Shown piece after piece: positions 41,101 to 61,349 of a stretch of DNA of 64,000 nt. The notes beneath the pieces were generated by a model. The model did no database searches. It saw only the letters and a program-made list of their open reading frames with translations, and was not told the DNA's origin. Source of the DNA: Trichoplax adhaerens (Eukaryota > Animalia > Placozoa). Position numbers and translations under genes: made by a program. The DNA is taken from contig NW_002060962.1 in NCBI RefSeq assembly GCF_000150275.1, positions 799,205-863,204 of the forward strand. The letters run 5' to 3'. The stretch's first letter is position 1. The number at the start of each line of letters is the position of its first letter.

Positions 41101-42466
41101 ATAGGCGAAAATTTAGTAATATTCGATTAGATAACTCTGAATTTCCATAGTTAGCTTAAAAAAATCGATATTTTAACTACATTGTTTCTATAACGTAATT
41201 CTAATACAACTTGGCAAAATGAATGTCTTCATTTCTTGAAATATCTTGTTGACTACCTTTAGTATTATTGTTTAGCTTAGCTATCCCCAGGTATTAGTTC
41301 TCTTTCATAAATGTTAGCAGCTTTACATAAACTTAAACAATAACTTGCAATATCCTTAAGTAATTACTTATTAACCGTTCTGTAGCAAATTCAAAATGAA
41401 TGATGGTAAAATTAATAAGTAGTTGTATCCTCTGATGCATAATTTACTCGCAGTACTAGGTATCATCTTATTAGCATAGATTGCTATTTATGTAACGCTT
41501 TTATGGCTAGCTGTCATAACGAGCGTTTTTGTTAGAAAGTAGTTTTCTCTTTGAATACGTGCTCTTTAAAAATGCACAAGTCTGTTATTTTCTAAGATTA
41601 CTTTGCCGATTGCTATTCTATAGGTATAACTTGCCCTTACATAAGTAGTAGTAATCAGGATGGAAAACAATACAGTACAAATAATATGAAATTGTCGTCA
41701 CCAAGCACGCAAGATTGCTGATGCGTGGTAAATGTTATAATCAATCTTGGCAATGTCAATATTATGGCTGTTTTAATTACATTAATTCAACATCCCTCTA
41801 ATCAATAATAGATGGCATGTGGATAGTGTTGATTTTTTAGCCATTGAATCAATAAAAATACATTCTATGTAACCTTTAATGGACTAATTTCAAAAGTAAA
41901 AGATATTACATAATTTTTAATAGGGAAAGTAGATTATAATCCATTCCTATAGAAACAACAATAAATTCATGCCCTTATGTCTTCTTACTCTTAAGCTTTG
42001 AATCAGAAATATGGTTGTAAATTGGAAAAAAATTGGAAAGTTAACTACAAATTGTTCTTAATAGAAGCTCTTTCTATTTTCAAGTACTGCATCAAGACTA
42101 CTCTCTTAAAGAAATAAATTGATAAGTTAAGCATCTATAAGTAGCAGTACATCATTACGGGTACTTCTTAGACAGGAATAAGAAAACTAAGATTACCTCT
42201 AAGGCAGATCAATGTAGAGGTTATTTTAATGAATACCATACCCTAGTAACAACTAATACTTTTAATGTAAATTAATAGGGATAAAGCCTATACATATTAA
42301 TGATAAGAATTAGTTATTATCCCTGTATAATTGGAATGAGCATTAGGTGATTTGATATCATATTGAATAATTTATTAGCCATTATCTTTATGGAGCATGA
42401 TTGTATTTGATCACTGAATTAAAATGGAAAATTATGAGGAAGTCTATTTGAGCACTAATGAATCGA

Positions 42467-42749
42467 TGCACCTGTTACCTTAATTGATGATATCAATGTT
42501 ATTTTTGTTCCATGATCCAGATTTGAGACCTGGTCACCCGTCTCTGGAATATAAGCAGATTGCATAAACAATAAAATTTTTATACTTATTGACGTTGGAA
42601 GATTTTGGTCATTAATTTTATATTACAAAGTAATAACATATAAAAGCCATTGATTTACTCTACTTTCTATCAATTATCATTACACATCTGAAGAAATTAA
42701 GCCTTCAGCTTTAAGATAATCGACAAATATCTTGCCTACATTAAAAAGG
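42467..42749 (+). promoter_or_regulatory. Predicted promoter and non-coding first exon of insulin-like gene 1
   Basis: TGCACCTGTTA at 42467, TATAAAAG at 42639, donor G|gtacgt at 42750, acceptor tag at 43085-43087 just before the ATG; same layout in the two paralogs. Confidence 0.6.
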
Positions 42750-43096
42750 GTACGTGAAGGATTTGATTTTTAGCGTAGATAAGATACAAGAAAAAATTTT
42801 TGTCTAGTTATTTTCAACACCGATATTATCTGATATTTGAGCTTAAAAAAGTATTGGTATATTTGTCAGACTCATCATTTTCTCAATTCATATTTCATTA
42901 ATTTTTATAGGTAATGTAAAATTTTTTAGCTAACTAATATAGAGAGCTGATAAAATTTGCATTTTTACTGTAATCGTTAACATCATTGATGATTTAGTAG
43001 GATAACGTGAAAAACTTATTTAAAAGAAACTAGTACTATGGCGTTATATCGAGTTTCACAGAGTGTATTTTGTTATTTTACAATTAGAGAGAAAAA

Positions 43097-43770
43097 ATGG
43101 CCGGCAAATTTGTATCTACACTCGTTCCACTTTTGGCTCTAGTCTGCGTCGCAGCAGCTTTAAGAACCGCTAATGATGATTTTGTTATTGGTCAAGATGA
43201 TTCTAATGTTGTCTTAAATTGTGCTGATTCAAAATCAATTGCTGTTAAATACTGGAATATGTGCGGTCTCAAAATCCAACTGTCATCTTGTCCTCTTCCA
43301 TCTATTACCAAGAGATTTGCTACCGCTGAAGATGATGAGAAATTTTACAACGCTTTGGAAGCTAAAAAGAATCGTGATATCAAATTTGATGGTAATTTAC
43401 TTAGATTATAATTTGTTGACATTGTATTCGATAAATAGCATAGCCATTGTCAATATTACGGGCTCGTAAAAGTTATATTCGATACTTAATGATAGCAGTC
43501 TAATAAGAACTCCTTTTTCACGTTCATTAAGGTATTTTGGAGTCCATCAAGGCGTCGAATACTTTCTTAATGCACAACAAACGCGCTCATAATGCTAAGC
43601 TTCGTAATATCAGGCGTCTCTGTTGTAAGAACACTATTATCCCCAACTGCAATGACCGTAAATTCTTGGAAACATGCCCCGGTGGTTCTAGATTCAAACA
43701 AAATTCATATGATGAAATTATCTTCATCGGTTGCGGTTTGGCAGCTGACGAATTAGCCCAAGAAGGTTAA
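43097..43770 (+). CDS. Insulin-like prepropeptide 1 (8 Cys), 2 coding exons, 177 aa
   Basis: Exons 43097-43391 and 43532-43770 (phase-1 intron). Signal peptide; B-like C-x13-C-x8-C; KR; C-peptide; KR; A-like CC-x7-C-x8-C-x18-C. Confidence 0.85.
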
Positions 43771-43879
43771 ATAGAATGCACGCCATAACTTTGCAGCATG
43801 CGAGCAGGACTATTCAATTTACCCTATTAACTTATTATATTCTTGATGATTGGCTCTCCAAAAAACGTGTAGATTATAA

Positions 43880-43896
43880 GATGTGAAGGCAATAAA
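43880..43896 (+). promoter_or_regulatory. Conserved 3'UTR element with polyA signal, GATGTGAAGGCAATAAA (gene 1)
   Basis: Identical 17-mer also at 52978 and 61447. Confidence 0.75.
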
Positions 43897-46800
43897 AAAA
43901 TGTACAACAAAAACTGTGATACGAGTATCTTTCTTATTGTTCAAGTATTGAATCTTCCTCACTGCTCATATAAAGACTTTCTAATGTGAAGATTAAGCAA
44001 CTTTCATTTTTTCTAGTAAAAAACAATCTGGGTAGATCTATTTTATCTGTTAATTTACGATTAGCTACTGTAATAAGATTGCCATAGACCTTTAGTAGCG
44101 AGTAGACAGTAAAACGAAAATTCATATACAATTTAACGTCCGATGGGTAGATACGGCAAAAAATTTATTCTATAAACGAGATTCCTCTGTAATAATACTT
44201 GAAACTGCCATTAAATGTATAAAGGTCGATATTATAAAATTTTTTGATGGATAACAGAAATCTATAAAATTTAGGATAGATTACAGACACAGTACTTATA
44301 CATATACCGCTTGCTAATTTTCTTACTCCAGTATCTGTGTATCAAAATTATTACAGTCAATGTTACTTTCATATCCAAACATCCAGAAACTAGTTGGATT
44401 GAAAAAAATGACCGCAATGCTCACTAGTTAATCTTTCCATCAGGTATGTATTTAATTTAGTTACATCGTGCTCAGGCAGATACTTAACTGCTACTTTATT
44501 AATTAAACGAGATATTCAAAAGACTGTGTCATAATAGCATGCAATCAGAGTAAGAAAGAATTGTCATAAGATATATATAGATCGAACTCAGATCTCGTAA
44601 CTTCGCAAGATTACAGCCTTAAGGTGATATTGTGAAAATGAATAAAATTACGATCAGTTGAAAAGACAAGAAAATACTTTATTTAAAATCATGTTGATTA
44701 CAGCTATACGGTATAGGTAAATTGCTGTAGAACTGTAAATTTTTGTATCTTCCATTCCATTTTGAGTTCAATTCAGCCGGAAATGGACTACTAAAAATAC
44801 AGAAGTAGCTGTATAGATCCAATTGCAGTAGTATACTATACATTTTTTTTAACTTTAATTTTATTTTGAGTTTATTTCAGCAAGAAATAGAGTATTGAAA
44901 TATAGAAATATATTGTTTCATTGCGTAATAGTCATCTTGAAAGCAAATCAGCATAAAATCATTTCACTATTTCTTATTATATAGCGCAAAATATGATCGA
45001 ATGATCTTAGCAGAATGCATTCATCTTAAATTAATATAACAGCCGGTGCTGGTGCTTTTGCTCGATTTTTTTTTGGCTATGACAACTACATCATGAAAGA
45101 AAAATGCCTAATTATATACTATTACGCTGCTTTTCTTCCGTATTGGCTAATATTTGATGAAAAATATTAGTAAAAGAGCAAATGTAGTATTGAGAAATAT
45201 TAAGAACTGAGTGGGTATCGAATAGATGCTCTATCGTCGTAAACAATATAATTATGATCTTAAGTCTAACCGTATTCAAGATTAAATATCCATATTTTAC
45301 ATTTAATTGGATACCTAGTGGCAAAAGTCATACCCAGAGTCTATAAATGAAGGCAGGAAATGGCTCATTAATGTATTGATTGCTGTGATATATTTTGCAG
45401 CTTTAAACTAAACGTTTGATTTTAATTAATAATATTCTACGTACTATCTTTCAGTTATAATTAGGAGTATATTCAGTAACTGCATATATGTGAATATGAG
45501 TAATATAATAAATACTAAGTATTAAGTACTAAATAATTGAACCCGCGTTTTAATAGTAATATTTTTAGTGGCTAAATGAGGATTGAAGATTATTGTTGTA
45601 AGCATCTTATTTATTAATTAATAGGATAGGCATTTACATCCTTTTCCTGATGGCTTAATTATTACTGTACCATTAACGCTTGCTATAGCAATCTAGCTAA
45701 TCAAACGCCTACTCTTTTCTGTTATAAGCTATTGCTAGGAAAATTTAGGCCACGTGTGGAAGTCTCTGAATGCCTAAAGATAACAATTTTTAGATAGGAT
45801 AACATCCATTACCATTTCAGAAATTTTACTGCTATGACTTCTGTACGCTTTGATTGTTAAGGAATGCATTAACATCGTTAACTTTACCTCAGTCCTATAT
45901 TTTAGTGTTCATTCGATGTAATACAAATATCTCGATAGTTTCAAAACTAATTTATTACCTACATAATGAGTAATGAAATTTCATCAACATTGGGCTTTTA
46001 ATGGTGCGAGAAAAATATTACTTGACATTTGAAATTTTCGATTCATAAATTAGGAAGTAAGAAATTATCCTATTTCTAAGTCAGAATTATTAATGCCTAA
46101 AGCTGACTATCTTACCTGCTATGGTAATAAAGTCTCCAATTAGCTGCAGACTTCGGTTACGTATAATGACAGTAGCAATTTTAAATTTCGATTTAATGGA
46201 TGGTATATATTACCGAAGCAAACATTTTAAACTATCTAGAAATAGTTTTGTTAGGCATTGCAGTAAATATAATTACATAGTATAAATAATTTACGAAACA
46301 ATTAGTAAATAAATTATAATGATTCATGATTAAAGTAATGCTTCATGATTATTTATTACCAATTTTATCAGTTTAATAATAAAGTCAGAAATGGTTCCCA
46401 ATTTAAACACATATTAGAATAGAGACTATAATACGTATTGAGTAATATACTTAATTATGTTTCATTAAAGCTTAGAACTGTGGTTTATATTTTTGGACGT
46501 AGAATGTAGATCTGATATTATATCATTATCATTATTTTGATTTGATGTCAGTTACTATCGTGATCTTTCCAAATATCACTTTGTCATAACTATCCAGATA
46601 ATATAAAGTTACAGGAATATATTCGTATCTTTTCTATTGTTGACACCTCTAAAACTACCCCTCTGTAGTTGCCTTGCTAACTACTAATCGTTACTAGAGT
46701 CTCAAAAATAATTGCTCAAAACAACTATTAAGGTTTTACTTACAAATAGATTATTTTTAGGAAGGACTCGCTCTCACAGTAACAAAATGGAACTCATTTA

Positions 46801-49396
46801 ACTTTATTTTACTCATCATTTTTTGGATTATCCCTCTACAGCATACGAACTTAAAGATAAGATTATAAAAAGTAACCTAATAGGAGGCACCGGTATCTAA
46901 ATATAGGACGACAATTCTCAAAAAATTTTTTATACATGATATCAATTTAGCACAATCAAAGTCTATTCTTGACCTAAATTGAGAAGAATTGATCAAAAAT
47001 CAAAATAAAGCTTTATGCATAAGCTTATCTTCCATTCTTCTTGAACAGACAGACATTCTATCTCAAAATTAATAAACTACTGCCATTTAATATTACTGAC
47101 GGAATACCTACAAATGCCTATTTAATAAAATAATAGACGTGAATAAACAACAGTAGCATATATGATTTGCTAGTGACGGAAAATGTAGTTTCGTTACAAG
47201 ACTATATAAAACTTTCTGTCACAGCCATAAGAAGTATTTATACTTTTAATAAAGACTTTATTACGTGAATTAAGATAGAAATTAACTGCGATATATAGAA
47301 ATCATTAGTGCAAGCATTAAGCTTATTTACTGATAGTTACACCTTATTGTAGATAGCATCGTATTATCAATACACACTGTATAAATATTATGAATAGATC
47401 CGAAAATATATAATGCTCAAATATTTATTGTCGATTGCAGATGCTTTATAAGTGATCGAGACAGTTTTAGAAATTTAATGTCGTAGAAGCTATTAATGAC
47501 GTGAAATGTCATTTAACGTGCATTCAAAGTTCCTATATAATGCCATTTTAAGAATAAAATCTAGGTCAATTTAGTAGGCGTGGGTTAAAATGTGATTAAT
47601 AGTTTACGCTAAGAAAATAAGATTAAATTTGCTGCTTTAATTTTAAATTATAGCATTATCATAAATCATTAGTAACTGAAGGGAAAAAAGTTATCAATTA
47701 ATAGCAAATCTGAAATTACTCCGTAGTCTACTTTTAACAGCGACAGCTGCAAATCCATCTTAGAAGATTAAAAGTTGCTGAATTAAACTTTCATGAACTA
47801 TAATGGGCAGCGATATACTCTTTAGATATGATGATAAAATGAAGTATGATATGACTGAACTTTCATTACTAGTAAACACACAAATATAAAGCCTTTTAAA
47901 TTAAGCCATTAACATACTGAATACATCAGTCTCGTATATTATAATTTTGCAACCATCACTATAGTACGGTTTATATGGATAGCAGAATCAAAGTAGCTAG
48001 GCAAAGACACAAATTACTGGTTATAATTGGACACTTCAATATTTGCTATATATGAGAATAGCCAAATGAATTTTATGAGATAAAGCACTTGATCAGATAA
48101 TCCATCAATCAATGTATCAATTAATCTTGTTTAAAATGATTTTATCTATTATTTATTATTTTGGAAATTGGCTATTAAATTCGTGAGCAATATTACTTGC
48201 TGCATATTTTATTATTAATTAATCCGCGTAGCCATGATGCATCCTAGATATTACAAAAAAATAATAAAAAACAAGACGATATCATTACGAAGGGATTGCT
48301 CGAATTTAAGCTAAACCTTATCAAATTCATATAGATTGAATAAATTGCAATTTAATAGAGACGCCATTTAGTCATCTACCTAGTATGGGGTACAGAATAA
48401 ACCATGATGCTAATTTAAAAATATCAAAATCATTACAGTCCTCCAGGATCTCTTGTGTACTTTATAATGATAATTTCGTTTTCAATCAATATCATTTCTA
48501 CTCTTGCTTCGATTAGGTTAATAAAGAAAAAGTATTCAATATAATACATTCAACATTCTATGTCTTATCTATGTGAAGGAATTGATAATAAAACATTCGA
48601 TTGCTGTTGTAAATCATGAAATTCGTATCAGCCAACAAATTGTAGAGTTGCAACGTTCGGATTTATATTTTAAATACTGTACTTAAACTGCTCTGCTAGA
48701 TACGACAATAGAGTCTGGTATTAAAGTATGAATAGTTTAAACTAGCTAGCTGCAAGTTTAAAAATCAGTCGACCGCGAATTAATGTTATTTTTCTATCTC
48801 AAAATAAACAAACTATTAAAAACATTATTAAATATTCATTTATTTAAGGCAAATAAATGAAGTCGACCTACTTCTATCAATTCAATTACATTATGTCCTT
48901 GTAACAGTATAAGATGGTCTTAAGAAGGTGATACTAAACAATCTGTTGATTAATTCAAGTTTATTGGGATTTATATATTACACCGATTGAGCTGAGTGTT
49001 GGTAATTTTACATGGAGACACTATAGCTTGATTTGAATGTTTGTAGCTTCCTTCCGTAAGTCCTCATCATAGAGTGAATTTTAGAGGAATAAATGATTAT
49101 CTGATGAATATAGAGGATATTCGAATAGGTTGCATGAATATGAATCGATATCTGTAATTTTCAAGTTTAGCTAACGAGATGGTGTATCAAATAATCAACA
49201 GTTACTATCCATGATAATGCTACTAAGACCAAAAACGAGGTCAATGAATTAAATTTTTTGATTGTTTATCCAGTTCGAATATTGCATAAAATTTTGATGT
49301 ACAACTCTTGATTGACTTTTACTTAGAACCTTCTAATAGCTATAGGAAATGCATAAATTATACAATAGTTCCATTAATATTCTACAGAATGAGATT

Positions 49397-49593
49397 TGCA
49401 CCTGTTATTTTATGATATTTATTTGTTAATTGAGCTCGGTATATTTCTTGTTAACAATAGAGTTATTAATGTTATATGGCTTGCGGAAAACCTTTAAAAG
49501 CTTAAGGATTGACGGCTTAAATTATTGTCTTTGCTTTTCTGGAGGATTGCAGCTTCAGCCAGAAGAATTATTCCACCCATCTTTTACCTACAG
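49397..49593 (+). promoter_or_regulatory. Predicted promoter and non-coding first exon of insulin-like gene 2
   Basis: TGCACCTGTTA at 49397, TTTAAAAG at 49493, donor cag|gtaccg at 49594, acceptor tag at 50884-50886; block conserved with 59670-59873. Confidence 0.6.
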
Positions 49594-50896
49594 GTACCGA
49601 TAATCTTCAATTTTAGCATAGTTTCTACTAATACTTATGCTATCTAGCTTGGTTTATTTGGAAGATGGTTGTAAATTGTAACTTGCTACATGTGATTTAC
49701 AAATACGATGACAATTTATAGTAAAATAGTGTTAAACGAGATACTTTGTAGCTTATTTATCTGCCAGTTACTAAACTGGTATTTTAATGTATTACAATTT
49801 TATTACTTTCGCATAGTCCTATTTCTGCTTTGATTGCCATGATTACAAAATAAGATAATAGTTAGTAGTAGGATGTTGCTAAAACAGAATAACTTACATC
49901 GTAGCGTATTTATCTGTCAGTTACTTAATCAATTTAAGAAGGTATTCTATTATTATAACTTTAATGGAATGCTACTTCCAGCTTGACTACTACAATTACT
50001 ATAATCAGTAAAATAAGATAATAATTTTAGTATATTGTCAATTATTTAACCGGTATTCTGATTAATTATAATTTTATAACATTAATGTAGTACTACAGTT
50101 TGGCTACTAATATTAGTAAAATATTAGGAGGATATGTAGCAAGATGTTGGTAAAATGAGGCACAATATAAGATAGTCTAGTCATCGGCTAAATAATCAAT
50201 CAATATTCTCAAGCATCTTAATTTTATGATTTTAATGTAGCACTACTTTTGATTCGATTACTATAATTAGCAAATATATCGTGACAATTTGCAGCAGAAT
50301 GTCGATAAAATGAAGTCATTCTTGTACATATATGCGCCTGCCAAGTAATCGATCGCTATTTTCTTGCATTATTCATCCTTTTATAATTTGAATACTACTT
50401 CAAAATGTTCTAAAATACTGTATTAGCTCGAAGCTTATATTCAAATTGTTCGTAAAATAGGTGAATTTTGTGCGATAGCTAGTCCATTTAGGCTGTTTTT
50501 AATATAGCTAAGGAAATCCTTTATAGAAAATTCACAGATATTTTCTAAAATATGTACTAATTAAGTTGTGCTAATAACCACTACTTCATTTCTTTTCAAT
50601 CAACTATTAACTGCCGATATTAAGTAATTTGCTCTTATTGCTACCAAAGCCTTAATATCTACGCAAAATATTCATTCCTCATGTTATTAATACACAACGA
50701 CCATAGTTAGTGGTTCTCAATTTAATAAGTCAATTTGAAAATCATACTTGAAAAAGAATTAACAGTTCTATTGCTATAGTCCATTAATATTGTTTTATAA
50801 ATCAGTTACCAATCATTTGTTTACAATTATAAACTCGCTGCTTAAAAATTTACACATTGCTATTTCATCTACTCTAGTTACTATAGGCATATAAGA

Positions 50897-52879
50897 ATGG
50901 CCAAATTGAATGTTTTATCGTTGATTGCCTTTTTGGCTGGCTTAGTCGTTGTCATTGAAGGAACGGATTTTATCATCTTTAATGAAATCCCGCCTACTAT
51001 TCACGTATGCGGCGATCAGAGGCTACAGATTTTAGATTATTGGGCAGAATGTGAATTGAACGTCCCCTTTGATGACTGTCCACTCAAGCGTCGCCGATCA
51101 GTTGATGTAAATCTCATTTCTGATTTCAACAAAGAGCCATCTTATAGCAAATTTGATGACCGTAAGTATAAGTCATAATTACTGCTAAATTCTTACTAGT
51201 TGTTATTATTCCAGACGAGGTAAACTTGGATATGGTTTCCATGAGTAGTTGCCTTGATAATGAATTTCCAATTCAATTTCAAGATGGTTTAATAAAACTT
51301 ATTAATTAACTGTATTTTTCTGTTTGTTTAATTATGCATTTGCTACTATCTGTATTAGAGAAAAAAATTAGCAGTGTTTGGCCATTCCATTTTATGGATA
51401 GCAAATTTTGTCTCATTTCTTTATAACATGTTATTAATCGTTCATTAGAAATATCTCTTACAAATTGATATTAGTTTAATTTAAAATATGAGTACGGCAT
51501 AGTCTTTCATTTAATTTCCAGTATACACGGTACGGTATAAAGTTACAGAACCTCTGTTAAATAGCTAAAAATGGAGAGTTACTGTAAGATTAGAGAAATG
51601 CGGTATGTATATCAGTATATGTCATATACTCAGGCTTTATCAACCAATGTACAAATGCTGTAGTCGTTACTACTACACAGTACACGGTATAAAGTTACTG
51701 AACCTCTGACAGGTCTACGACAAATGGTAATACTATCTGTTAAATGAGCACATTATCGTAAACCGTCAGCAAAGCGACGGGAGTTTGCACTAGTAATAAT
51801 ACGAAGTAAAGCACATAGGACGTATAACAGTCAGTTATACTAAAAGACTAAATATAGATGATAGTAAATAAGTTCTTTATTGGAGTCATATACTGACATG
51901 ATTCTTAATTCCTGGGTAGAATATTGTAAAGGAATATTTAATCATTTTATGTATAAGTTTTATGGAATGATTAATCTAGAGTTTACAGTAAGTTAGTATA
52001 ATTATCCAGTTTATCTTGATCGTTTCCAACTGTTCCTATGAGGAGAAAAGGAGTGTAATATTCTCCGATTGACAGACTTGAAAAATGTTACTTTTAAGGT
52101 TAAAAAGCGGTCTTGATAATCAAATTAGGGAATTATTCTGTTTAACAACTTAAATCTTGAGTTAGAGGATCGAAAACCTTACTGGTTAAAAATTCATCCA
52201 TCAAGATTACTTACGCAATGCTTGATTAGATTAATTTGTTATATCATAGAGGCAGCAATGTAGCCTTTAAAAGTTACCAAGGCCTTTACGTGATTTGAAA
52301 TGACATCTTCACTCGACGTGTTCATTAAATACTTTCGGTATATTGCAGTTGTAAATTCAATTTAGCACCCTTACATTTTTAAATCCATTTCTTTTATATA
52401 TGTATGTATTTATTTATACGTATTGTCATAAGAAATATGTATCCATATATAGTAAAGCATACAGTACATTCTAAGAAGTAATTTATCAATCTTAAGCAGA
52501 GTTTGCTTGATAATTCCGATTCCTGATGGATATTATTTAACATATAGCTAACATTTACAATTTTATAGTTAATTTATGTAGGTGCAGTCGTATAATTAAT
52601 ATTTTTGATTTATCGCTGATATGTATCATTTACTATACAGGATTGATTGAAGCTGACAACGTTAATAATTTCTTAAAATTTGGAAAAACTTTATATGCGC
52701 GTCTTCAACCTTTGAATCTTGAAAAAATAGACGAGAAATGCTGTATGCCAGCACCCAATCCAGCGACTGAATGTGGTATGTTGCCTGATTTATGTCCTGG
52801 CGGTAGCATGTTTGATGAAACTACCAGAGAACAAGTTATTATAGGTGGTTGCGAAGTTTTTATTGAAGAAAATCTATAA
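50897..52879 (+). CDS. Insulin-like prepropeptide 2 (8 Cys), 2 coding exons, 167 aa
   Basis: Exons 50897-51161 and 52641-52879 (phase-1 intron). Signal peptide; HVCG..C-x13-C-x8-C; KRRR; CC-x9-C-x6-C-x18-C. Confidence 0.85.
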
Positions 52880-52977
52880 TTTTTCTCGCTATCAATCGTT
52901 GATTTAAGTAAGCAGAACTATCCAATTTACTCCCTCAAAGTATGATTGCTTACTGCGATCAAATATGTAGACTGCAA

Positions 52978-52994
52978 GATGTGAAGGCAATAAA
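52978..52994 (+). promoter_or_regulatory. Conserved 3'UTR element with polyA signal (gene 2)
   Basis: GATGTGAAGGCAATAAA. Confidence 0.75.
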
Positions 52995-55900
52995 GATGAT
53001 GTTATAAAATCGATTCTTGAATTTCGCTTTATTTATTTTTGTTCCGTTGATTTAAATTTTGGATCATGAGGCTATTTATTTTAATAATAGAGCCTTGAAA
53101 TAGACATGTTCCATTTCTATTCAGACTTAATCTAAATTAGACTAGTGTAACTAACAGATTATGCAAGTTAAATTGAAAGCTATTGCTGTAGTTTGTACAA
53201 CAATAAAGTTTAGCTTGCTAAACTTTATTGTACAAAAGTAGATTCGACTGCCAATATAGAGAAAAAATTTCTTGACAGTTGGGCAATCTCAGCTTTCGTG
53301 CTTGATGACTGCTAGAATTTCTCGCGGACACAGTAGGTAATTTTTAAGTTCTATATCTATTAGTATATTGTAAATTAAATTACCATAGGAAGAATAATAC
53401 CAATAAGAAGAAATAGGTCAAATTTGTGATACTGTCAATAAAACTATATTGCGATAATATTCTAATATACCTATCTTATTTACTGTATATGTACGTGTAT
53501 CTAAGTACAGTATATGAATTATGATCGTCAACTACCCAGTATAAAAATACTGTTGTGCATTATTTTGCTAGCTGGGATCATAAATTGTGAGGTTGATAGA
53601 TAAAAAATCTTCAAAACTTTAGAAAATATAAGATTTATTGAACAAAACCTCGTTTACGAAGATACAACGTAACCGATTAGCTGAGGACCTCTAACGAGAA
53701 AGAACTTTCTTACTATACTAGACTACTCGCTTAATACTTTTCCGCGTTTACAGTCTTAGCACCTTACTTACTACACACTTCAGTATTAGCATCTCAAATA
53801 CAGACTAGTTTACATCTTTCATGTGAAGCTCTAGTGTGAGCACTGTAGCACTCCTCTTCAAAAGGATTACAGTTACTAAGCTAGCTATATTTAATGCTTA
53901 AGCCTCGAACGAGAATATCTATCACATGTTGAACACAACGCCTACGGTAGACATTACTAAATATATCATCAACTTAGAATACAATATTACACTGTCTTAT
54001 ATAAATAAACCCGTATGATAGTTAATAGCCTCTGTTATTGTAGCATACTTTCCCAAAATCTTTTTAATAGTAGTTATTGTATTATATTTATTGGTATATG
54101 TTCATCTCAGTGACGAATAGGAATCTCACGTCATTTCACATTATCTAACATCGCCAATAGGCCGTAAATTTATCTCCTGCAGCTTATACCATAACTAATA
54201 GATAATTACCATCAAAATTGCCGTTACTTTTCTCTTATAACATGTCATACATAGTATAAGACCAGCTGATTTATTAGTTTCCTCTACTAATAAATTGGTA
54301 ATGTTACACTGATTATGTATATTCCCTCTATATTCCAGTAAAATGGGTAATTTTGTCTGTAGGTGGGGGCTACTTTTACTCTCACGTTGTTTTATATCAT
54401 TATCATATTATTTCTTAGTATTTCAGAGCACAAGTATAAATATATAGAAGTAAAAATTTTAGTAATAACTCTCGGAATAGCATATTTTCAACATTGTGGG
54501 TTTGAAGTCTAGCTATAGTAAGAATAATGAAATTCATTTCTGAATATCTCTATTCTGTCATTTGCAAGGTGACTCAATCATAGGTGTATGCTATTAAAAA
54601 TTGAACTTCTGAAATTTTGAATCGGCCTAATCAATGGTATTTGTTCTTTGCTATCGGTCGATAAACATAGTAAAATCTTAGTGCATGTTAGTAATTTGCA
54701 TTCAATTACTATTAATGAAATAGACATTTCGGAATCGTGCGTTTTTAAAGTTATGGAATTTAAAAGCCTAAATTTACTAATCATTTAGGGATAAATTGTG
54801 GGATTATATTCAACTGATACAAACTTAAAATAAATCTATTTTCCGCATAGAAAGTAGTTGCTTGTATAACTTTAATATGATTGATTATAAGAAGGGTACG
54901 GTAGTAACTATGAACTTATTTAATCGTATTTTGATAATAAAAACTATAGTCTTTGCCTTAAAAGTATCATAACGAGTCTTATGCCTGATAATGGTAAGCT
55001 CAAGCTGAAGCGTTATATTTGTGAACTACGTTGGATAAATTTTTACTAACTTTAGCTATAGGTAAGAGCGTAAACAGATTAGTTTCAGAGGACATATATC
55101 ACTTTATTAATACGCGAAAAGATTTGAACTTTTAAAAGAATGACTTTATAATATTGTAGTATAGCTTCCTTATGCTAGTATGAGGAGAATTACTCGCCTT
55201 ACATCAAGCTAAGTAATATTAAGCAACATCTAAGAATTTAAACTGACCTTAATCGGTGCTTTAATCTTGATGTTCGAGGTGAAATGCTCATTAAAATTAG
55301 AGCCTATTTAAGAAAGTTAAATCGAAATTTTAATATTCTAAATCCGTAATCACGCTTTGATTCTGCCTTTATATAGACAAAAGTGTTAAAATCTGCAACG
55401 ATAAAGACTAATTGGTTTAATTGATGCGACACATTAGGCGTGCGCTATATTTAAATTTTCGGCTAATTATATTTTCAGACGGATTAAATTGTAAATAAGC
55501 TCTCCGCGAACAAAAGTAGTAGAATAAATAGAGATGAGAGCAATAAAAATGCTAGCAAGTCATATTCTTTTAACAGATAACATCATATAAATAGTGAACT
55601 GATATAGCTGAAATTAGCATAGAATCAAACTAGAAGGAATCCAGTTTAGTTTCTAACTCAAGAATGATTACTATTAGACATGATACGTTGAAACAGCTAA
55701 CCGTTATGCAGCATAAAACTCATCGACGTAAAATAAGCAATCGAAAATTTCGAAATGCGGGCTAATATTTTCTAGTTAATGCCACGCAATAATTAATTAG
55801 TAGCGTTATTAATTAATTATCACTTTCTAGATATAATGCTGTCGTTAAATTTATAAAGATAACCGGTAACCAGTATTGCTCTTAATGATAAGTAATATTG

Positions 55901-56304
55901 TTTCTATTTCGTAATATAAAGCGTTCATGTCCTATTATATAAGAATGCCAATTTTTAAATCATTACCTGCGTAAGAGTGTTGAGATACAAAATGAAAATT
56001 ATTATGATTTAACTGCGGACAAATTAATAATACCGGTACTCTTCAACAATAGCTAAATTTTCTTATGGCAAAGCAATAGATTAAATTTTAGCATGAATCT
56101 TCGCTTTGCAATAAATTTGCAGATAATTCAACAGCTAAGAAAACAAGGACATTCAGAAGGAAAACTTACTATTTTAATAATGGTTTCTATATTATGATAG
56201 TAATAAATTATTAGCAACATGCTCTACATAAATACGGATATCTAGGAAATGGAATTGCTTCGGATATTAGGTAATATAATTATATTCATTTGAAAGCATT
56301 CAAG

Positions 56305-56660
56305 CATGGTATTATTTCAGCTCCTTTTGGAATATTTTATCTTTATGACACTCTTACAGATGATCTTCATCAGAATTCTAAACATTGCTATAATAGCCTT
56401 ATCAATATAATTACTTCTCTCGCTCTGATTTAATGAGTTTAAAAATTCAGTAGAGATCCGCCTATTCTGACAAAAATCTCTATTATCTACATGGCTTAAT
56501 TATTAAATATATCATTTTAAGCATTATTACAGAGATTATTGACTAATATCAAGTGCTGTAAGTTCATCAATTAATTATCGCCTAGCTATTTGCTGCTAGA
56601 GTTCAATTATGTAGTAGATTATTTTGGTTAGAAAGTGGCTACAAACTAGATTTACAATAA
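56305..56660 (+). repeat. Dispersed repeat, copy 2 (homologous to 15355-15700)
   Basis: Same colinear blocks as copy 1. Confidence 0.65.
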
Positions 56661-59600
56661 AGCTGGTATGATTTGAGTAATGAATATATGCCACAGTACT
56701 GAGCGCTACTTTTAGCAATCCGAATTATTAGCCTTAAGGATGTGGCGTTAATGTTAGTCTTGGGAACTGAAATATCTCTATGTTTGTGCTTTATTTTTCT
56801 ATCAGAGGTAATTGTATATGGTAATCATTAAGCATCTTACAGCACAATAAAATAAATCATTCAACTGTTTTAAACTTTAATTCGTCGCTCAGACAATATG
56901 TGACAAAATTCTGCTAACATCAATATCCTGCACCTACGACGGCGACACTAATCATAACATTTCATGTTACGCAGATAGTTCATAATTATCATCAATTCTG
57001 CAAGCTAAAGAATAGTCTGATTGGATATCTGAAATCAAATTATAACAAAATTATAATACGTAGGTACCACCTTTCAACTGAAGTATCTTCATAAATGATT
57101 TATAACGTTGGAGTACATGGACCAATACTTTAAAATGCAAAACGTATCAGTAAAGTTTAATCACTACTATAAGTGTAAATTTCTATCATGAAATTTGTAC
57201 ACTATATTAGTCAAATTGGATATTCTTTCATGATTATAAGAATTTTTGTATAGCTTTAACAAATATTTACTACACGAATTCAAGTGAAAATTAATGACTA
57301 TGTCTGGATGCTATAGAGAACTTATGACTATACGTCAGAACAGAGGGTAGGAAGTTGATCTAAGAATTACATCATTTATTTATGGCCTATTGTTTATTTC
57401 TATTTCATTTACACTTTGGCCATTCGATACTGCTACCTGCATTAAGTGCAATAGAAGACGTCAACGTAAAATATAATATTAATATGCCGTCAAAAATTTT
57501 TACTACATGATACATTATTAACAATGGAATACCAGTACAAGTTAAATTTATTTGAAATGTGTTAATAGGCGTAGTAAAAAATTAACACTAAGAATAGTGT
57601 GTTTTAATTTTCAGCTTATTAATTTTCACAGTGTTATAGTGCTAACAAAACGACAGGAAACATACTATATAGGATATAGAGCTATTAAATAATAATTGAT
57701 TTGGTCTTACTCCTTAGTTGAATTCTGATTCTGGCAGCTGTAATTCTGTGATTGGAAATGAAGATTTGATGAATTAAATTTTGATGAATTATAGAGATTA
57801 TCGCGATGAACTTACTACACGTTTTAAGATAAAGAAATACTTTATAAAAGGTTTTTCGTGGACAGTAGATATGAAGTTGACTGTTTCTCTATTTTACTGT
57901 GTCCAGTATATCAATCTAAATTACATTATTGCTAAGAATTTGCTGTATTACGATAGTTCATAGGATTAAAAGGTCAATATGAGTACATGCAAATAAAAAT
58001 TACTGAATATAATAATAAACTAATGCGCTAATACGATATTTTATATCTACTAGAATAAAGTTTGATATTTATTCATCAATAGTTAGATAAGCCAATTTAT
58101 CAATCAATATATCAATTAATCTTGTTTAAAAATGATTTCATTCATTATTTATTCTGCTTGAAGTGACTTATTGGATTCCCAATGGAAGGCACTTAGTGCT
58201 TAGTTGGTGTATAATTATCTAGATAGAAATAAAGGTGCATCCTAGGTGTTTCAAACAAATAGTAATATCATTGCTACGATATTATTCGATTTCTTGGCTA
58301 GACAATATTTATCAGATTCATTTAGACTGGATTGCTTAGACATAAACAGGGATAGTGCTATTATCTATAAAGCATTAATTATTGAAAAAATCCGTCAAAT
58401 TAACTTAAAACTAAACAGCGTTACTAATACGCTAAGGCGTCCCACTTCCTATTGTTACATTTTCCTTCATAAGCCAATGCAATATCTATTTTTGACTACG
58501 TAGCAATTGAAATGTTACTATCAACATTAAAAATTTATCTTATTAATCAAACGAACTGATTATTTTTATATTAAAAATAGGTTTATTATTTTTTAAAGTG
58601 CACAGCATATCGATTAACCATTGCATATAACTGATAAACTCTTTTGGTACTTAATTATTAAGCTTTGCTACCTAGCGCATTACTTCAATGTTTAAGATTA
58701 TTAGTCATCCTTTATTGCAAAAATTAAATGTATCACTAGCCACTCTTCTTAATCGAGATTACGTAACTGTATTAAACATTTCGTTTCTCTGTTTAGCATC
58801 TTTATAAAAGTCTATTTCGATACATTTGCATTGCCAAAATATTATATTATTCAGTTGGTATTTGTCATCTACGCTAATTTTGTACATCATCTTATAAAAT
58901 TTGAACTCTTGTAATACATAGATTGTAGCAGTTGAATGGCTTAACTAGATAGATGATGCAATATTATATACTTCGGTATGGCGTTAAGGCAAAAGGTGTT
59001 CAAGTCTACCCAAGCGAAAACTTTAATGGTGATCACTCACTCAAGTGTGGAGTGATATGTGTCATTTTATATGTCATCGTAATCAAAACATTATTGAATA
59101 TTTATAAATTTACGGCAGCTATAGGAAATTGATCAAATTCTATCGATCATATTACTCCAATTGAATATAAACATAACGCCTTAGGGCGAAAAGAATTTTA
59201 AAACAAATTATTGATTTGTTAAAGTCCGTACGAGATTGATACTTTTATCACGTTAGATATTCGAAGCGATTTTATGTAGAGTTTATATATCTTGGTTGAT
59301 ACAATAGAGCTTCTTCTAGAAAGTTCTCTGCATCTTAAAATGAGGTATAAAAAATAGGATAACTATCTAAGGAATGTAATAGGAATCTAAATAACACGAC
59401 ACAGTTATCAACACCGTTAGTTATCCAAGTGGACTGACGATATCGAATTAAATGATTTACAATTCGAATGATGATGAGACCAAGGCACTAAAATATTAGT
59501 TTCGAAATAAATTTCTTGATTGTTTATTTCTGAATACGTAATATTTTAATATTCATTTCCCTATTGGCCTTTAGTTGGAACAGTCCTAATAATTATAATC

Positions 59601-59669
59601 ATTATAATCAGAAGGAAATCCATAAATTACAAAACAAATCGATTAATATTCGACAGGACAGGAAGATTT

Positions 59670-59873
59670 TGCACCTGTTATTTATGATATTGGCGAATAT
59701 GCTAATTGCGATTGATCCACTTCTGTTATTAATAGAGGCCATTAATTTTGCATGCCGATAGCTTAAGGGCAACCTTTAAAAGCTAGCGGATTAACGGTTT
59801 TACGTTATTGTGTTTGCTTGTCTGGAAGATTGCAGTTTCAGTCAAAAGAATATTCCATCCGCTCTCACCTAAG
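59670..59873 (+). promoter_or_regulatory. Predicted promoter and non-coding first exon of insulin-like gene 3
   Basis: TGCACCTGTTA at 59670, TTTAAAAG at 59775, donor aag|gtaatc at 59874, acceptor tag at 60385-60387. Confidence 0.6.
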
Positions 59874-60397
59874 GTAATCTTTAGTTTTAGCGCACTTTCC
59901 ATTTGCATTTGTACTATGGAGTCCTTGTCTGTGCTATAATAGACAAAATAGAATGATAATCTGCAGAATGCTATCAATTGAATAGGGCTATAGGTGTATG
60001 TATTTTGATTTTTAAATTTTACTCCTACTTTGCATAGCCTTAAATATACTAGTATAATATTCAATAATCTATATTCAAATAGTTAATAAAGCATATTAAT
60101 ACAACAGCAACTTTACTCAGTGCAATATTAGTTTAATCAAATCTTGATAATGTAGAAAATTTACTCGTAATCTTCATATTATCATTGAGTTAACTTACAG
60201 CTACTAGAGTACTTAATCTCTAAGCAAAGTAAAATCGAATACCAAATAGTGTTTTATGTTATTAAGATATCATGTAATAGTTTTACTTGAAAAAAGAAGG
60301 ACTATCATAGCAAAGTCTATTCAATGGTAGAATAAATTGGCTTGCCAATATTTTGTATTTAAATTTTATATGTAAAAATTATTTTAGGTAGATAATA

Positions 60398-61349
60398 ATG
60401 GCCAAATTGAATGTTGTATCTTTGGTTGCCTTTTTGGCTGGCTTAGTCGTTGTCATTGAAGGAGGAGATTTCATCATCTTCAATGAAATTCCTCCTACTG
60501 TTCACGTTTGCGGTAATCAGAGGCAGCAGGTTTTAGATTACTGGGCAGAATGTGAATTAAACATTCCCTTCGATGAATGTCCACTTAAACGACGTCGATC
60601 AGTTGATGTAGACATTGTTACTGATTTCAAGAAAGAGCCATCTTATACCAAATTTGACGACCGTAAGTATAAGTTGCAACTGAAAGATACTACGGCCTCA
60701 ATGATAATTGGGCTGTATACTTTATATTTATTTAACATCTATCTAATAATATCGCCAAAACTATAATTCCTAGATAATGTGTATATCAACTAGGCATTTC
60801 TACCTCAGATGATGCATATGTTGATAGTGTCTTTCATTGTTAGAAAATTATTGATCTATCAATTTAGTAACAGAGATTGGTAAATGGACATTAATTCAAT
60901 TTTATTTCAAATTAATATACAAATATAATTGTTCTATTAGCCTACTTTAGAACATCTACCCAAAAAAGTATTTAATAATGTAGAAATTGAATAGCCAAAT
61001 CATTTTAATTCTTACTAGTTGATATGCAACATCTTGCCAGTAACTTATATACAATTCTTGATTTTTCAAGGGGATAGCGGATAATAACTTCTTTCTTTAT
61101 TATGTAGGATTGATTGAAGCTGGTCACCACACTAATAACTTCTTGAAATTTGGAAAATCTTTATACACCCGTCTTCAAGAATTGAACCTTGAAAAATTAG
61201 ACGAGAAATGCTGTATGCCTCCACCCATGCCTGCCAAGGAATGCGAAATGTTGCCTCAGCTATGTCCTGGTGGCAGTATGTTCAATGAAGCCCTTAAAGA
61301 TGATATCATTAAAGGTGGTTGCGAAATTTTTATCGAAGAAAATCTATAA
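60398..61349 (+). CDS. Insulin-like prepropeptide 3 (8 Cys), 2 coding exons, 168 aa; close paralog of gene 2
   Basis: Exons 60398-60662 and 61108-61349 (phase-1 intron); ~78% identical to gene 2 by manual count, with the same Cys frame. Confidence 0.85.

What the first reader, a model, noticed from the sequence alone, without database searches (positions are those of the whole stretch)
42467..60397. All three peptide genes share a promoter module: TGCACCTGTTA E-box, ATGATAT, TATA and a 5'UTR intron
Seen: the identical 11-mer TGCACCTGTTA (E-box CACCTG) lies at 42467, 49397 and 59670. Each copy is followed within ~10 bp by ATGATAT, then a T(A/T)TAAAAG box (42639, 49493, 59775), a similar leader (tctg.ag.a....cttcag.), a splice donor ~100-110 bp after the box, and an acceptor 9-10 nt before the ATG. 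Flanking DNA of gene 1 is otherwise unalignable by eye with genes 2 and 3. Established: vertebrate insulin genes have a 5'UTR intron and depend on an E-box bound by bHLH factors (NeuroD/E47); CACCTG/CAGGTG is bound by achaete-scute/E-protein and Snail-type factors. Inference: a conserved bHLH-driven programme for a hormone-secreting cell type, and a three-exon insulin gene plan that may be very ancient.
Basis: partly seen in the sequence, partly recalled or inferred. Interest (0 to 1): 0.8.

Follow-up and report, generated by a model that had tools for sequence, protein, structure and literature searches.

The report
Conserved E-box in placozoan prohormone promoters
A short DNA word (GCACCTGTT, an E-box) sits in front of all six genes of a Trichoplax peptide-hormone family and has not changed in distant placozoan relatives, so it is very probably the switch site that turns these genes on in hormone-secreting cells.

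Summary
TGCACCTGTTA lies at 42467, 49397 and 59670 (0.05 copies expected in the window). The genome (Trichoplax adhaerens-like, 105.6 Mb) has only 36 copies against 30 for a control word, so the word is neither common nor enriched overall. A fourth copy lies in front of a fourth paralogue just outside the window. Two more paralogues carry one-base variants, so all six share GCACCTGTT on the sense strand, 96-202 bp upstream of a TATA-like box.

An unbiased k-mer test finds this as the only word shared by the five independent promoter lineages (0 of 1000 shuffles). It is identical in orthologues of genes 1, 2/3 and 6 from two other diverged placozoan lineages, where introns and flanks are at background identity.

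ATGATAT and the "similar leader" are not conserved or not beyond chance. The 5'UTR intron is well supported by conservation and splice signals but was not seen in transcripts.

Published single-cell data (Najle 2023) place genes 1-3 in one peptidergic cell type (beta). Which factor binds (bHLH or Snail/Scratch) is open. Insulin identity is not supported here: the canonical Trichoplax insulin genes lie elsewhere and lack this word. The scan's other notes cover this same stretch only.

The parts
42436..42443 (+). Gene 1: GAGGAAGT (GGAA/ETS-like word) 24 bp upstream of the E-box
   Evidence: Conserved in orthologue L040. Related AGGAAAT occurs upstream of genes 2, 3 and 4, and ACTTCCTC downstream of the gene 6 E-box. 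Noticed post hoc; no significance test run.
42467..42477 (+). Gene 1 E-box 11-mer TGCACCTGTTA (core GCACCTGTT)
   Evidence: Identical in orthologue L040 and in Trichoplax sp. H2.
42487..42493 (+). Gene 1 ATGATAT; really the spacer region of an inverted repeat TTGAT-nnn-ATCAA
   Evidence: In L040 the arms are kept but the ATGATAT word is not.
42639..42646 (+). Gene 1 TATA box TATAAAAG, 172 bp after the E-box
   Evidence: Lies in a 50-nt run invariant against L040. The spacing is 173 bp in L040.
42670..42749 (+). Gene 1 predicted non-coding exon 1 (start inferred about 30 bp after the TATA box)
   Evidence: 90-93% identical to L040, above the coding exon. Identity drops at the GT donor at 42750. 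No ATG in the leader.
42750..43087 (+). Gene 1 predicted 5'UTR intron (GT 42750, AG 43086-43087)
   Evidence: Identity to L040 is 0.40-0.67, the background level. The acceptor is 9 nt before the ATG at 43097 and 10 nt before it in L040.
49344..49360 (+). Gene 2 conserved block AGGAAATGCATAAATTA, about 50 bp upstream of the E-box
   Evidence: AGGAAAT and CATAAATTA are invariant in genes 2 and 3, L036 and L038.
49397..49407 (+). Gene 2 E-box 11-mer
   Evidence: It is part of the longest invariant run (12 nt) in the four-way alignment.
49493..49500 (+). Gene 2 TATA-like box TTTAAAAG, 96 bp after the E-box
   Evidence: Second-longest invariant run, CTTTAAAAGCT. The spacing is 96 bp in L036 and L038.
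49523..49593 (+). Gene 2 predicted non-coding exon 1
   Evidence: Conserved against gene 3, L036 and L038 up to the donor. No ATG in the leader.
49594..50886 (+). Gene 2 predicted 5'UTR intron, enlarged by a degenerate 120-153 bp repeat array
   Evidence: The acceptor AG at 50885-50886 is 10 nt before the ATG at 50897.
59613..59629 (+). Gene 3 conserved block AGGAAATCCATAAATTA
59670..59680 (+). Gene 3 E-box 11-mer
59775..59782 (+). Gene 3 TATA-like box TTTAAAAG, 105 bp after the E-box
59805..59873 (+). Gene 3 predicted non-coding exon 1
   Evidence: Conservation island at 59770-59860 against L036 and L038, with a drop after the donor at 59874.
59874..60387 (+). Gene 3 predicted 5'UTR intron
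   Evidence: Background identity. The acceptor is 10 nt before the ATG at 60398; it is 10 nt in L036 and 9 nt in L038.

Best explanation
The three genes in the window, plus three paralogues outside it, form one placozoan family of secreted 8-cysteine prohormone genes. Najle et al. 2023 label genes 2 and 3 'hypothetical prorelaxin'. Each gene carries the non-palindromic E-box GCACCTGTT on the sense strand, 96-202 bp upstream of a TATA-like box. Four of the six have the full TGCACCTGTTA. This is the only word the paralogue promoters still share, and it is unchanged in orthologues from two other diverged placozoan lineages. It is therefore a transcription-factor site inherited from the ancestral gene and kept by purifying selection. 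The most likely mechanism is that a class-A bHLH dimer (an E-protein plus a cell-restricted partner) binds it and activates the TATA-directed promoter in peptidergic cells. Transcription would start about 30 bp after the TATA box and give a 40-90 nt non-coding exon 1. An intron of 0.23-1.3 kb would then be spliced to an acceptor 7-10 nt before the ATG. The choice of cell type (genes 1-3 in type beta, gene 6 in type eta) must come from the other, paralogue-specific conserved blocks. Shown here: presence, rarity, strand, spacing and conservation. From the literature: expression. Inferred: the factor, activation, transcription start and splicing.
For: The 11-mer occurs 3 times in the window against 0.05 expected. 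Genome-wide there are 36 copies against 30 for the control word, and 4 of them lie within 32 kb in front of paralogues. Genes 5 and 6 carry one-base variants. GCACCTGTT has 312 copies genome-wide against 260 for the control, and 6 of them are these promoters, all on the sense strand. It is the only 7-, 8- or 9-mer shared by five independent promoter lineages; 0 of 1000 shuffles give any shared 9-mer. It is exact in orthologues L036-L040 and L060-L062, with E-box-to-TATA spacing kept at 96, 172/173 and 173-188 bp. It is part of the longest invariant run in the gene 2/3 four-way alignment. Promoter plus leader are more conserved than the coding sequence, while the introns sit at background. No leader contains an ATG, and donors and acceptors are kept in orthologues. 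Genes 1-3 are markers of peptidergic type beta with peptides seen by mass spectrometry, and gene 6 of type eta (PMC10580291 Table S5).
Against: No transcript, CAGE or ATAC data could be read here, so the transcription start and the 5'UTR intron are predictions. No binding data exist. The invariant flanks (9-11 bp, asymmetric) fit a multi-zinc-finger Snail/Scratch protein at least as well as a bHLH dimer. Gene 6 has the same E-box but is expressed in a different peptidergic type, so the word alone does not set the cell type. Orthologues of genes 4 and 5 were not obtained. In gene 6 the acceptor near the ATG is not conserved.
Confidence: 0.7

Rival explanations
1. The conserved word is a Snail-box. 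A Snail or Scratch C2H2 zinc-finger protein binds AACAGGTGC, either repressing these genes outside their proper cells or sharing the site with a bHLH activator.
For: All six sites contain ACAGGTG on the antisense strand and match 8 of the 9 positions of the CES-box CAACAGGTG (PMC2699517). The invariance extends beyond the hexamer on both sides and the orientation is fixed, as expected for an asymmetric multi-finger protein. Trichoplax has one snail and one scratch gene (PMC2688512).
Against: Snail-type factors are mostly repressors, whereas this is the one element common to very highly expressed cell-type markers. The first CES-box position is T or G here, not C. No binding or expression data for the Trichoplax proteins were available. 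The two readings are not exclusive.
Confidence: 0.3
2. The E-box/TATA block is a distal enhancer or the promoter of a separate non-coding transcript. The protein-coding mRNA starts just upstream of the ATG, so there is no 5'UTR intron.
For: No transcript evidence was obtainable. In gene 6 the AG near the ATG is not conserved in orthologues.
Against: The last 30-60 bp before the ATG is at background conservation and has no TATA box. The upstream block has a TATA box at fixed spacing, a conserved ATG-free leader and a conserved GT donor where conservation stops. An AG preceded by a T-rich tract lies 7-10 nt before the ATG in genes 1-5 and in orthologues.
Confidence: 0.08
3. The shared word has no function. 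It is chance, a neutral relic of the duplications, or a product of gene conversion.
For: The word is not enriched genome-wide. Genes 2 and 3 are recent duplicates.
Against: No shuffle in 1000 gives a 9-mer shared by five lineages. The flanks are diverged beyond alignment while the word is exact in 13 sequences from three placozoan lineages. Gene conversion tracts of 9-11 bp with unrelated flanks on two contigs are implausible.
Confidence: 0.02

Closest known systems
Vertebrate insulin promoter E-box/A-box unit (NeuroD1-E47 with PDX1) and the three-exon insulin gene plan (from my own knowledge)
   Same: A peptide-hormone gene with a promoter-proximal E-box upstream of a TATA box. TAAT-type words lie nearby. 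Exon 1 is non-coding, and a phase-1 intron separates the N-terminal and C-terminal cysteine domains.
   Different: The E-box subtype is CACCTG, not CATCTG. The TAATTG/ATTGAT words near it are not beyond chance in this AT-rich DNA. The proteins do not test as insulins. Homology of the regulatory plan cannot be shown.
Snail-box ACAGGTG and CES-box CAACAGGTG of Snail-type zinc-finger factors (PMC2699517)
   Same: A perfect ACAGGTG in all six sites, with an extended conserved flank. Such sites are known to be shared with bHLH factors.
   Different: The first CES-box base differs. The role would be repression or sharing rather than simple activation. No placozoan binding data exist.
Placozoan regulatory-element and motif lexicon (Najle et al. 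2023, PMC10580291)
   Same: The same genes are listed there as peptidergic markers. bHLH-type motif archetypes (Neurod, Olig) and homeobox codes are reported for placozoan cell types.
   Different: The text and tables I could read describe no gene-family-specific E-box and no element at this locus.
Canonical Trichoplax insulin-like genes TrIns1-4 (Nikitin 2015, as cited in PMC12702675 and bioRxiv 10.1101/360925)
   Same: Tandem cluster of secreted two-domain cysteine peptides. CACCTG E-boxes lie on the sense strand near them.
   Different: They lie on another contig (C1408:4170430-4187000) and have the CC-4X-C-8X-C signature. There is no GCACCTGTT within 40 kb; their E-boxes read CACCTGC[CT].

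Membership tests
E-box cis-element (class-A bHLH site) | CANNTG core | tested here: met
   CACCTG is present in all six paralogues and all orthologues.
E-box cis-element (class-A bHLH site) | Evolutionary constraint on the site relative to its flanks | tested here: met
E-box cis-element (class-A bHLH site) | Bound by a bHLH dimer present in the expressing cells | not testable with these tools
   The only available data are that Ptf1a is expressed in peptidergic progenitors and that Neurod/Olig motif archetypes are reported (PMC10580291).
Snail-box / CES-box | ACAGGTG heptamer | tested here: met
   The reverse complement of CACCTGT is present in all six sites (definition from PMC2699517).
Snail-box / CES-box | Nine-base CES-box CAACAGGTG | tested here: not met
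   The sites read TAACAGGTG in five genes and GAACAGGTG in gene 5, so 8 of 9 positions match.
Snail-box / CES-box | Snail or Scratch factor encoded in the genome | not tested
   Reported as one snail and one scratch gene in Trichoplax (PMC2688512). I did not search for them myself.
TATA-box core promoter with 5'UTR intron | TATA-like box at a conserved distance, followed by an ATG-free leader, a GT donor and an AG acceptor just before the ATG | tested here: met
   In gene 6 the acceptor position is uncertain.
TATA-box core promoter with 5'UTR intron | Transcription start and splice junction seen in RNA | not testable with these tools
   No transcript contigs were found.
Insulin/relaxin superfamily (Pfam PF00049) | Profile match | tested here: not met
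   No Pfam family matches at E up to 10 for P0001, P0002 or P0005. No PDB sequence match. The genome scan with PF00049 was uninformative because nothing scored in the controls either.
Insulin/relaxin superfamily (Pfam PF00049) | Cysteine signature: B chain C-x11-C, A chain CC-x3-C-x8-C | tested here: not met
   This family has C-x13-C-x8-C, then CC-x6..9-C-x6..8-C, plus one more cysteine.
Insulin/relaxin superfamily (Pfam PF00049) | Insulin fold | tested here: inconclusive
   The AlphaFold2 model has mean pLDDT 57. Foldseek gave no match. The best VIA score is Z 3.3 with no insulin among the hits. The ESM Atlas gave nothing.
Insulin/relaxin superfamily (Pfam PF00049) | Precursor plan: signal peptide, N-terminal domain, dibasic site, connecting peptide, C-terminal domain, with an intron in the connecting part | tested here: met
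   Connecting-region peptides were seen by mass spectrometry (PMC10580291 Table S5). This plan is not specific to insulins.

The most novel reading that the evidence does not exclude
The unit of E-box (possibly with a homeodomain site), TATA box, 5'UTR intron and phase-1 connecting-peptide intron may be homologous between these placozoan relaxin/insulin-like prohormone genes and bilaterian insulin-family genes. That would mean a regulatory programme for an endocrine cell type older than nervous systems. The evidence here does not exclude this, but nothing here shows homology rather than convergence on common promoter parts.
Probability: 0.08. Interest if true: 0.8.

Novelty: new member of a known kind. 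Interest (0 to 1): 0.5.

Why it matters
Placozoans have no neurons but many peptide-secreting cell types, and it is not known how each type selects its hormone genes. This work defines one sharply bounded 9-11 bp site. It is shared by a whole prohormone family, unchanged across placozoan lineages, and tied by published single-cell data to defined peptidergic cell types. That makes a concrete target for testing with existing ATAC maps, DAP-seq or yeast one-hybrid assays of the few candidate factors (E-protein partners, Ptf1a, Snail, Scratch). It also shows that the canonical Trichoplax insulin genes use a different E-box flavour, which argues against a simple 'insulin E-box' story.

Tried and rejected
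Transcript evidence. The protein word searches returned only genome-derived models and exon read-through ORFs, and look-ups of the full-length proteins gave only genomic loci. The start site and splicing therefore stay predicted.

ATGATAT as a module part. Rejected because it is not conserved in orthologues and is absent from genes 4-6.

'Similar leader' between gene 1 and genes 2/3. Marginal by local alignment. The best local match is instead GTYATTAATKTTATAT just before the TATA box, and that is not kept in L036 or L038.

TAATTG/CAATTA next to every E-box. It is the only 6-mer shared by all five lineages within 80 bp, but shuffles give 0.46 such words on average. I kept it as a lead only.

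Two 11-mer copies 8.7 kb apart on C1414. Their contexts are unrelated and no peptide gene is nearby.

Other genome copies of the 11-mer. None has ATGATAT, and only two have a TATA-like word within 300 bp.

Insulin identity. Pfam, PDB sequence search, a structure model with Foldseek and VIA, and the ESM Atlas were all negative or inconclusive. The PF00049 genome scan was uninformative.

Joined exons. They were used exon by exon by reference. Full-length proteins were taken only from the database (P0001, P0002, P0005, P0007).

The big representative-protein search was not used. No contig looked human.
Full report
WHERE THIS IS. The window is G000:C1395:799205-863204 of a 105.6 Mb, 1414-contig, roughly 30% G+C genome. 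The proteins encoded here are carried in public databases as TRIADDRAFT_64323 (Trichoplax adhaerens) and TrispH2_010965 and TrispH2_010967 (Trichoplax sp. H2). The organism is therefore a placozoan of the T. adhaerens type.

THE OBSERVATION.
- TGCACCTGTTA occurs exactly three times in the window, at 42467, 49397 and 59670, all on the + strand. Shuffles give a mean of 0.05 copies and never three.
- Each copy is followed by ATGATAT (3-9 bp later) and then by TATAAAAG or TTTAAAAG at 42639, 49493 and 59775.
- A GT donor lies 99-111 bp after that box, and an AG acceptor lies 9-10 nt before the ATG.
- The coordinates and the description are correct.
- Genes 2 and 3 are recent duplicates. Their promoter and first exon align at high identity while most of their introns do not. 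They count as one lineage.

IS THE WORD COMMON?
- No. The whole genome has 36 copies on both strands, against 30 for the same word read backwards.
- The 9-mer core GCACCTGTT has 312 copies against 260 for the control.
- There is no genome-wide enrichment, and one copy per about 3 Mb is what the base composition predicts.
- Four of the 36 copies lie within 32 kb of contig C1395, all on the + strand. By my own arithmetic, about 0.01 copies are expected in such an interval.

MORE PARALOGUES, ALL WITH THE WORD. Searching the genome with the database proteins found three more family members.
- Gene 4 is at C1395:874.5-875.2 kb, about 11 kb beyond the window end.
- Gene 5 is at C1395:883.7-885.6 kb.
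- Gene 6 is on another contig, at C1411:3.3446-3.3475 Mb.
- The fourth genomic copy of the 11-mer lies 577 bp upstream of the gene 4 ATG.
- Gene 5 has TGCACCTGTTC and gene 6 has CGCACCTGTTA.
- All six genes therefore carry GCACCTGTT on the sense strand.
- In each gene a TATA-like box follows, at 172, 96, 105, 180, 202 and 173 bp for genes 1-6.
- A GT donor follows the TATA box by 70-120 bp.
- An AG lies 7-10 nt before the ATG.
- None of the six predicted leaders contains an ATG.
- All six also have a phase-1 intron between the N-terminal and C-terminal cysteine domains.

AN UNBIASED TEST.
- I took the 400 bp upstream of each TATA box for five independent lineages (genes 1, 2, 4, 5 and 6) and listed every k-mer present in all five on the same strand.
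- The only 7-, 8- and 9-mers found are pieces of GCACCTGTT.
- In 1000 dinucleotide-preserving shuffles, none gave any shared 9-mer and three gave a shared 8-mer.
- ATGATAT is absent from genes 4-6 and is not kept in orthologues.
- The core promoter plus leader of gene 1 against genes 2 and 3 scores only z of about 2.

ORTHOLOGUES.
- The word-based protein search found exon-level ORFs 69-80% identical in ENA and Logan assemblies, and their contigs were fetched.
- They fall into two further lineages, which I could not name. Their upstream and first-exon DNA at the gene 2/3 locus is 68% identical over aligned positions.
- The 11-mer is exact in the gene 2/3 orthologues (L036-L039) and in the gene 1 orthologue (L040). 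The gene 6 variant is exact in L060-L062.
- The E-box-to-TATA spacing is kept: 96 bp for gene 2/3 orthologues, 172/173 bp for gene 1, and 173-188 bp for gene 6.
- In the four-way gene 2/3 alignment the longest invariant run in 434 columns is TTGCACCTGTTA. Next come the TATA box CTTTAAAAGCT, then CATAAATTA and AGGAAAT.
- Identity profiles for gene 2/3 show two islands, one covering the E-box with its upstream block and one covering the TATA box with the leader. Everything else, including intron 1, is at background.
- For gene 1 the promoter and leader (0.73-1.00) are more conserved than the coding exon (0.60-0.83), and identity drops at the predicted donor.
- Gene 6 has a 95-bp stretch conserved in three lineages: invariant runs of 37 and 59 nt separated by two variable bases. 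It contains a perfect CRE (TGACGTCA), CAATTA, the E-box and ACTTCCTC.
- This is classic phylogenetic footprinting. The word is under purifying selection.

WHAT THE GENES ARE AND WHERE THEY ARE EXPRESSED.
- Table S5 of Najle et al. 2023 (PMC10580291) lists TrispH2_010965 and TrispH2_010966 (genes 3 and 2) as 'hypothetical_prorelaxin'.
- It also lists TrispH2_010967 (gene 1), without a name.
- All three have their top expression in the peptidergic cell type 'beta', with fold changes of 456, 7.2 and 601.
- Peptides from the connecting region were detected by mass spectrometry.
- Gene 6 (TrispH2_003786) is a marker of type 'eta'.
- The three window genes are thus co-expressed in one hormone-secreting cell type, which fits a shared switch.
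- The same E-box in a gene of another peptidergic type shows that the word cannot set the type alone.
- The same paper reports that each peptidergic type has its own homeobox factor, that Pax2/5/8, Jun and Fos are pan-peptidergic, and that Ptf1a marks peptidergic progenitors.
- That fits the paralogue-specific conserved blocks, which include TAAT-type words, GGAA words and a CRE. I did not test those links.

ARE THEY INSULINS? This is not shown.
- No Pfam family matches at E up to 10, and there is no PDB sequence match.
- An AlphaFold2 model built on an exon-wise family alignment reached only pLDDT 57.
- That model gave no Foldseek hit and a best VIA Z of 3.3, with no insulin among the hits.
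- The cysteine spacing differs from insulin's.
- The four predicted Trichoplax insulin-like peptides in the literature have CC-4X-C-8X-C, and one ends in CPIH-amide (PMC12702675; bioRxiv 10.1101/360925).
- Using that peptide end, I located this canonical cluster at C1408:4170430-4187000.
- It has no GCACCTGTT within 40 kb.
- It does have six sense-strand CACCTG sites, four of which read CACCTGC[CT]. One lies 25 bp before the TATATAAGG box of the gene whose ATG is at 4181924.
- E-boxes may therefore be a wider theme of placozoan peptide genes, but the 11-mer belongs to the 'prorelaxin-like' family only.

WHICH FACTOR?
- CACCTG is a class-A bHLH site.
- The reverse complement AACAGGTGC contains the Snail-box ACAGGTG and 8 of the 9 bases of the CES-box CAACAGGTG. 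Snail-type and bHLH factors are known to share such sites (PMC2699517).
- Trichoplax has one snail and one scratch gene (PMC2688512).
- The invariant, asymmetric flanks and the fixed orientation suit either a heterodimer or a multi-finger protein.
- I favour an activating bHLH because this is the one element common to very highly expressed markers. The Snail/Scratch reading stays at about 0.3, and the two are not exclusive.

LIMITS.
- The transcription start, the splicing of the leader and any binding are inferred.
- No RNA-derived contigs were available.
- Orthologues of genes 4 and 5 were not obtained.
- In gene 6 the AG near the ATG is not conserved, so its acceptor may lie further upstream.
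- Spliced proteins for genes 4-6 and the orthologues were not assembled.

VERDICT.
- The finding is a real, selected cis-regulatory E-box/Snail-box shared by a six-gene placozoan prohormone family. It comes with a conserved TATA promoter and a very probable 5'UTR intron.
- The bHLH reading is plausible but unproven.
- The insulin and deep-homology readings are not supported.
- It is a new, well-defined example of a known kind of element and is of moderate interest.

Noticed in passing
L008:1501-2805 (G000:C1395:873903-875207); L053/L054 (C1395:883190-885579); L049/L058 (C1411:3343860-3347484): Three further paralogues of the window's peptide genes lie outside the window. Two continue the tandem array and one is on another contig. 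Each has the same exon plan and the E-box core.
   Followed up: yes
L049:656-752 (gene 6 promoter), aligned with L060 and L061: A 95-bp block conserved in three placozoan lineages, made of invariant runs of 37 and 59 nt separated by two variable bases. It holds a perfect palindromic CRE (TGACGTCA) 36 bp upstream of the E-box, CAATTA, and ACTTCCTC. Jun and Fos are reported as pan-peptidergic factors.
   Followed up: partly
window 49344-49360 and 59613-59629: AGGAAAT(G/C)CATAAATTA about 50 bp upstream of the E-box is invariant in genes 2 and 3 and two other lineages. It looks like a GGAA (ETS-like) site plus an ATGCAT-AAAT (POU/homeodomain-like) site. Genes 1 and 4 have GAGGAAGT and GAGGAAATG at similar distances.
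   Followed up: partly
The arms, but not the spacer, are kept in the orthologue L040, which suggests a dimeric binding site.
   Followed up: no
L066-L069 (G000:C1408:4166500-4206499): The canonical Trichoplax insulin-like cluster: four tandem genes with B chain C-x11-C and A chain CC-x4-C-x8-C, one ending in CPIHGK. Six sense-strand CACCTG sites are present, four reading CACCTGC[CT], and one lies 25 bp before a TATATAAGG box.
   Followed up: partly
window 49709-50309: Intron 1 of gene 2 holds a degenerate direct-repeat array (four 57-nt register copies spaced 121-153 bp, 65-72% identical). This accounts for its length of 1303 nt against 524 nt in gene 3. Gene 2 is also reported as much more weakly expressed than gene 3 (fold change 7 against 456).
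   Followed up: partly
window 43097-43391, 50897-51161, 60398-60662 and the last exons 43532-43770, 52641-52879, 61108-61349: All family members share DF(I/V)IFN after the signal peptide, a KRR(R)S dibasic site, and a C-terminal CC...C...CPGG...GC domain. The coding intron is phase 1 in all six.
   Followed up: partly
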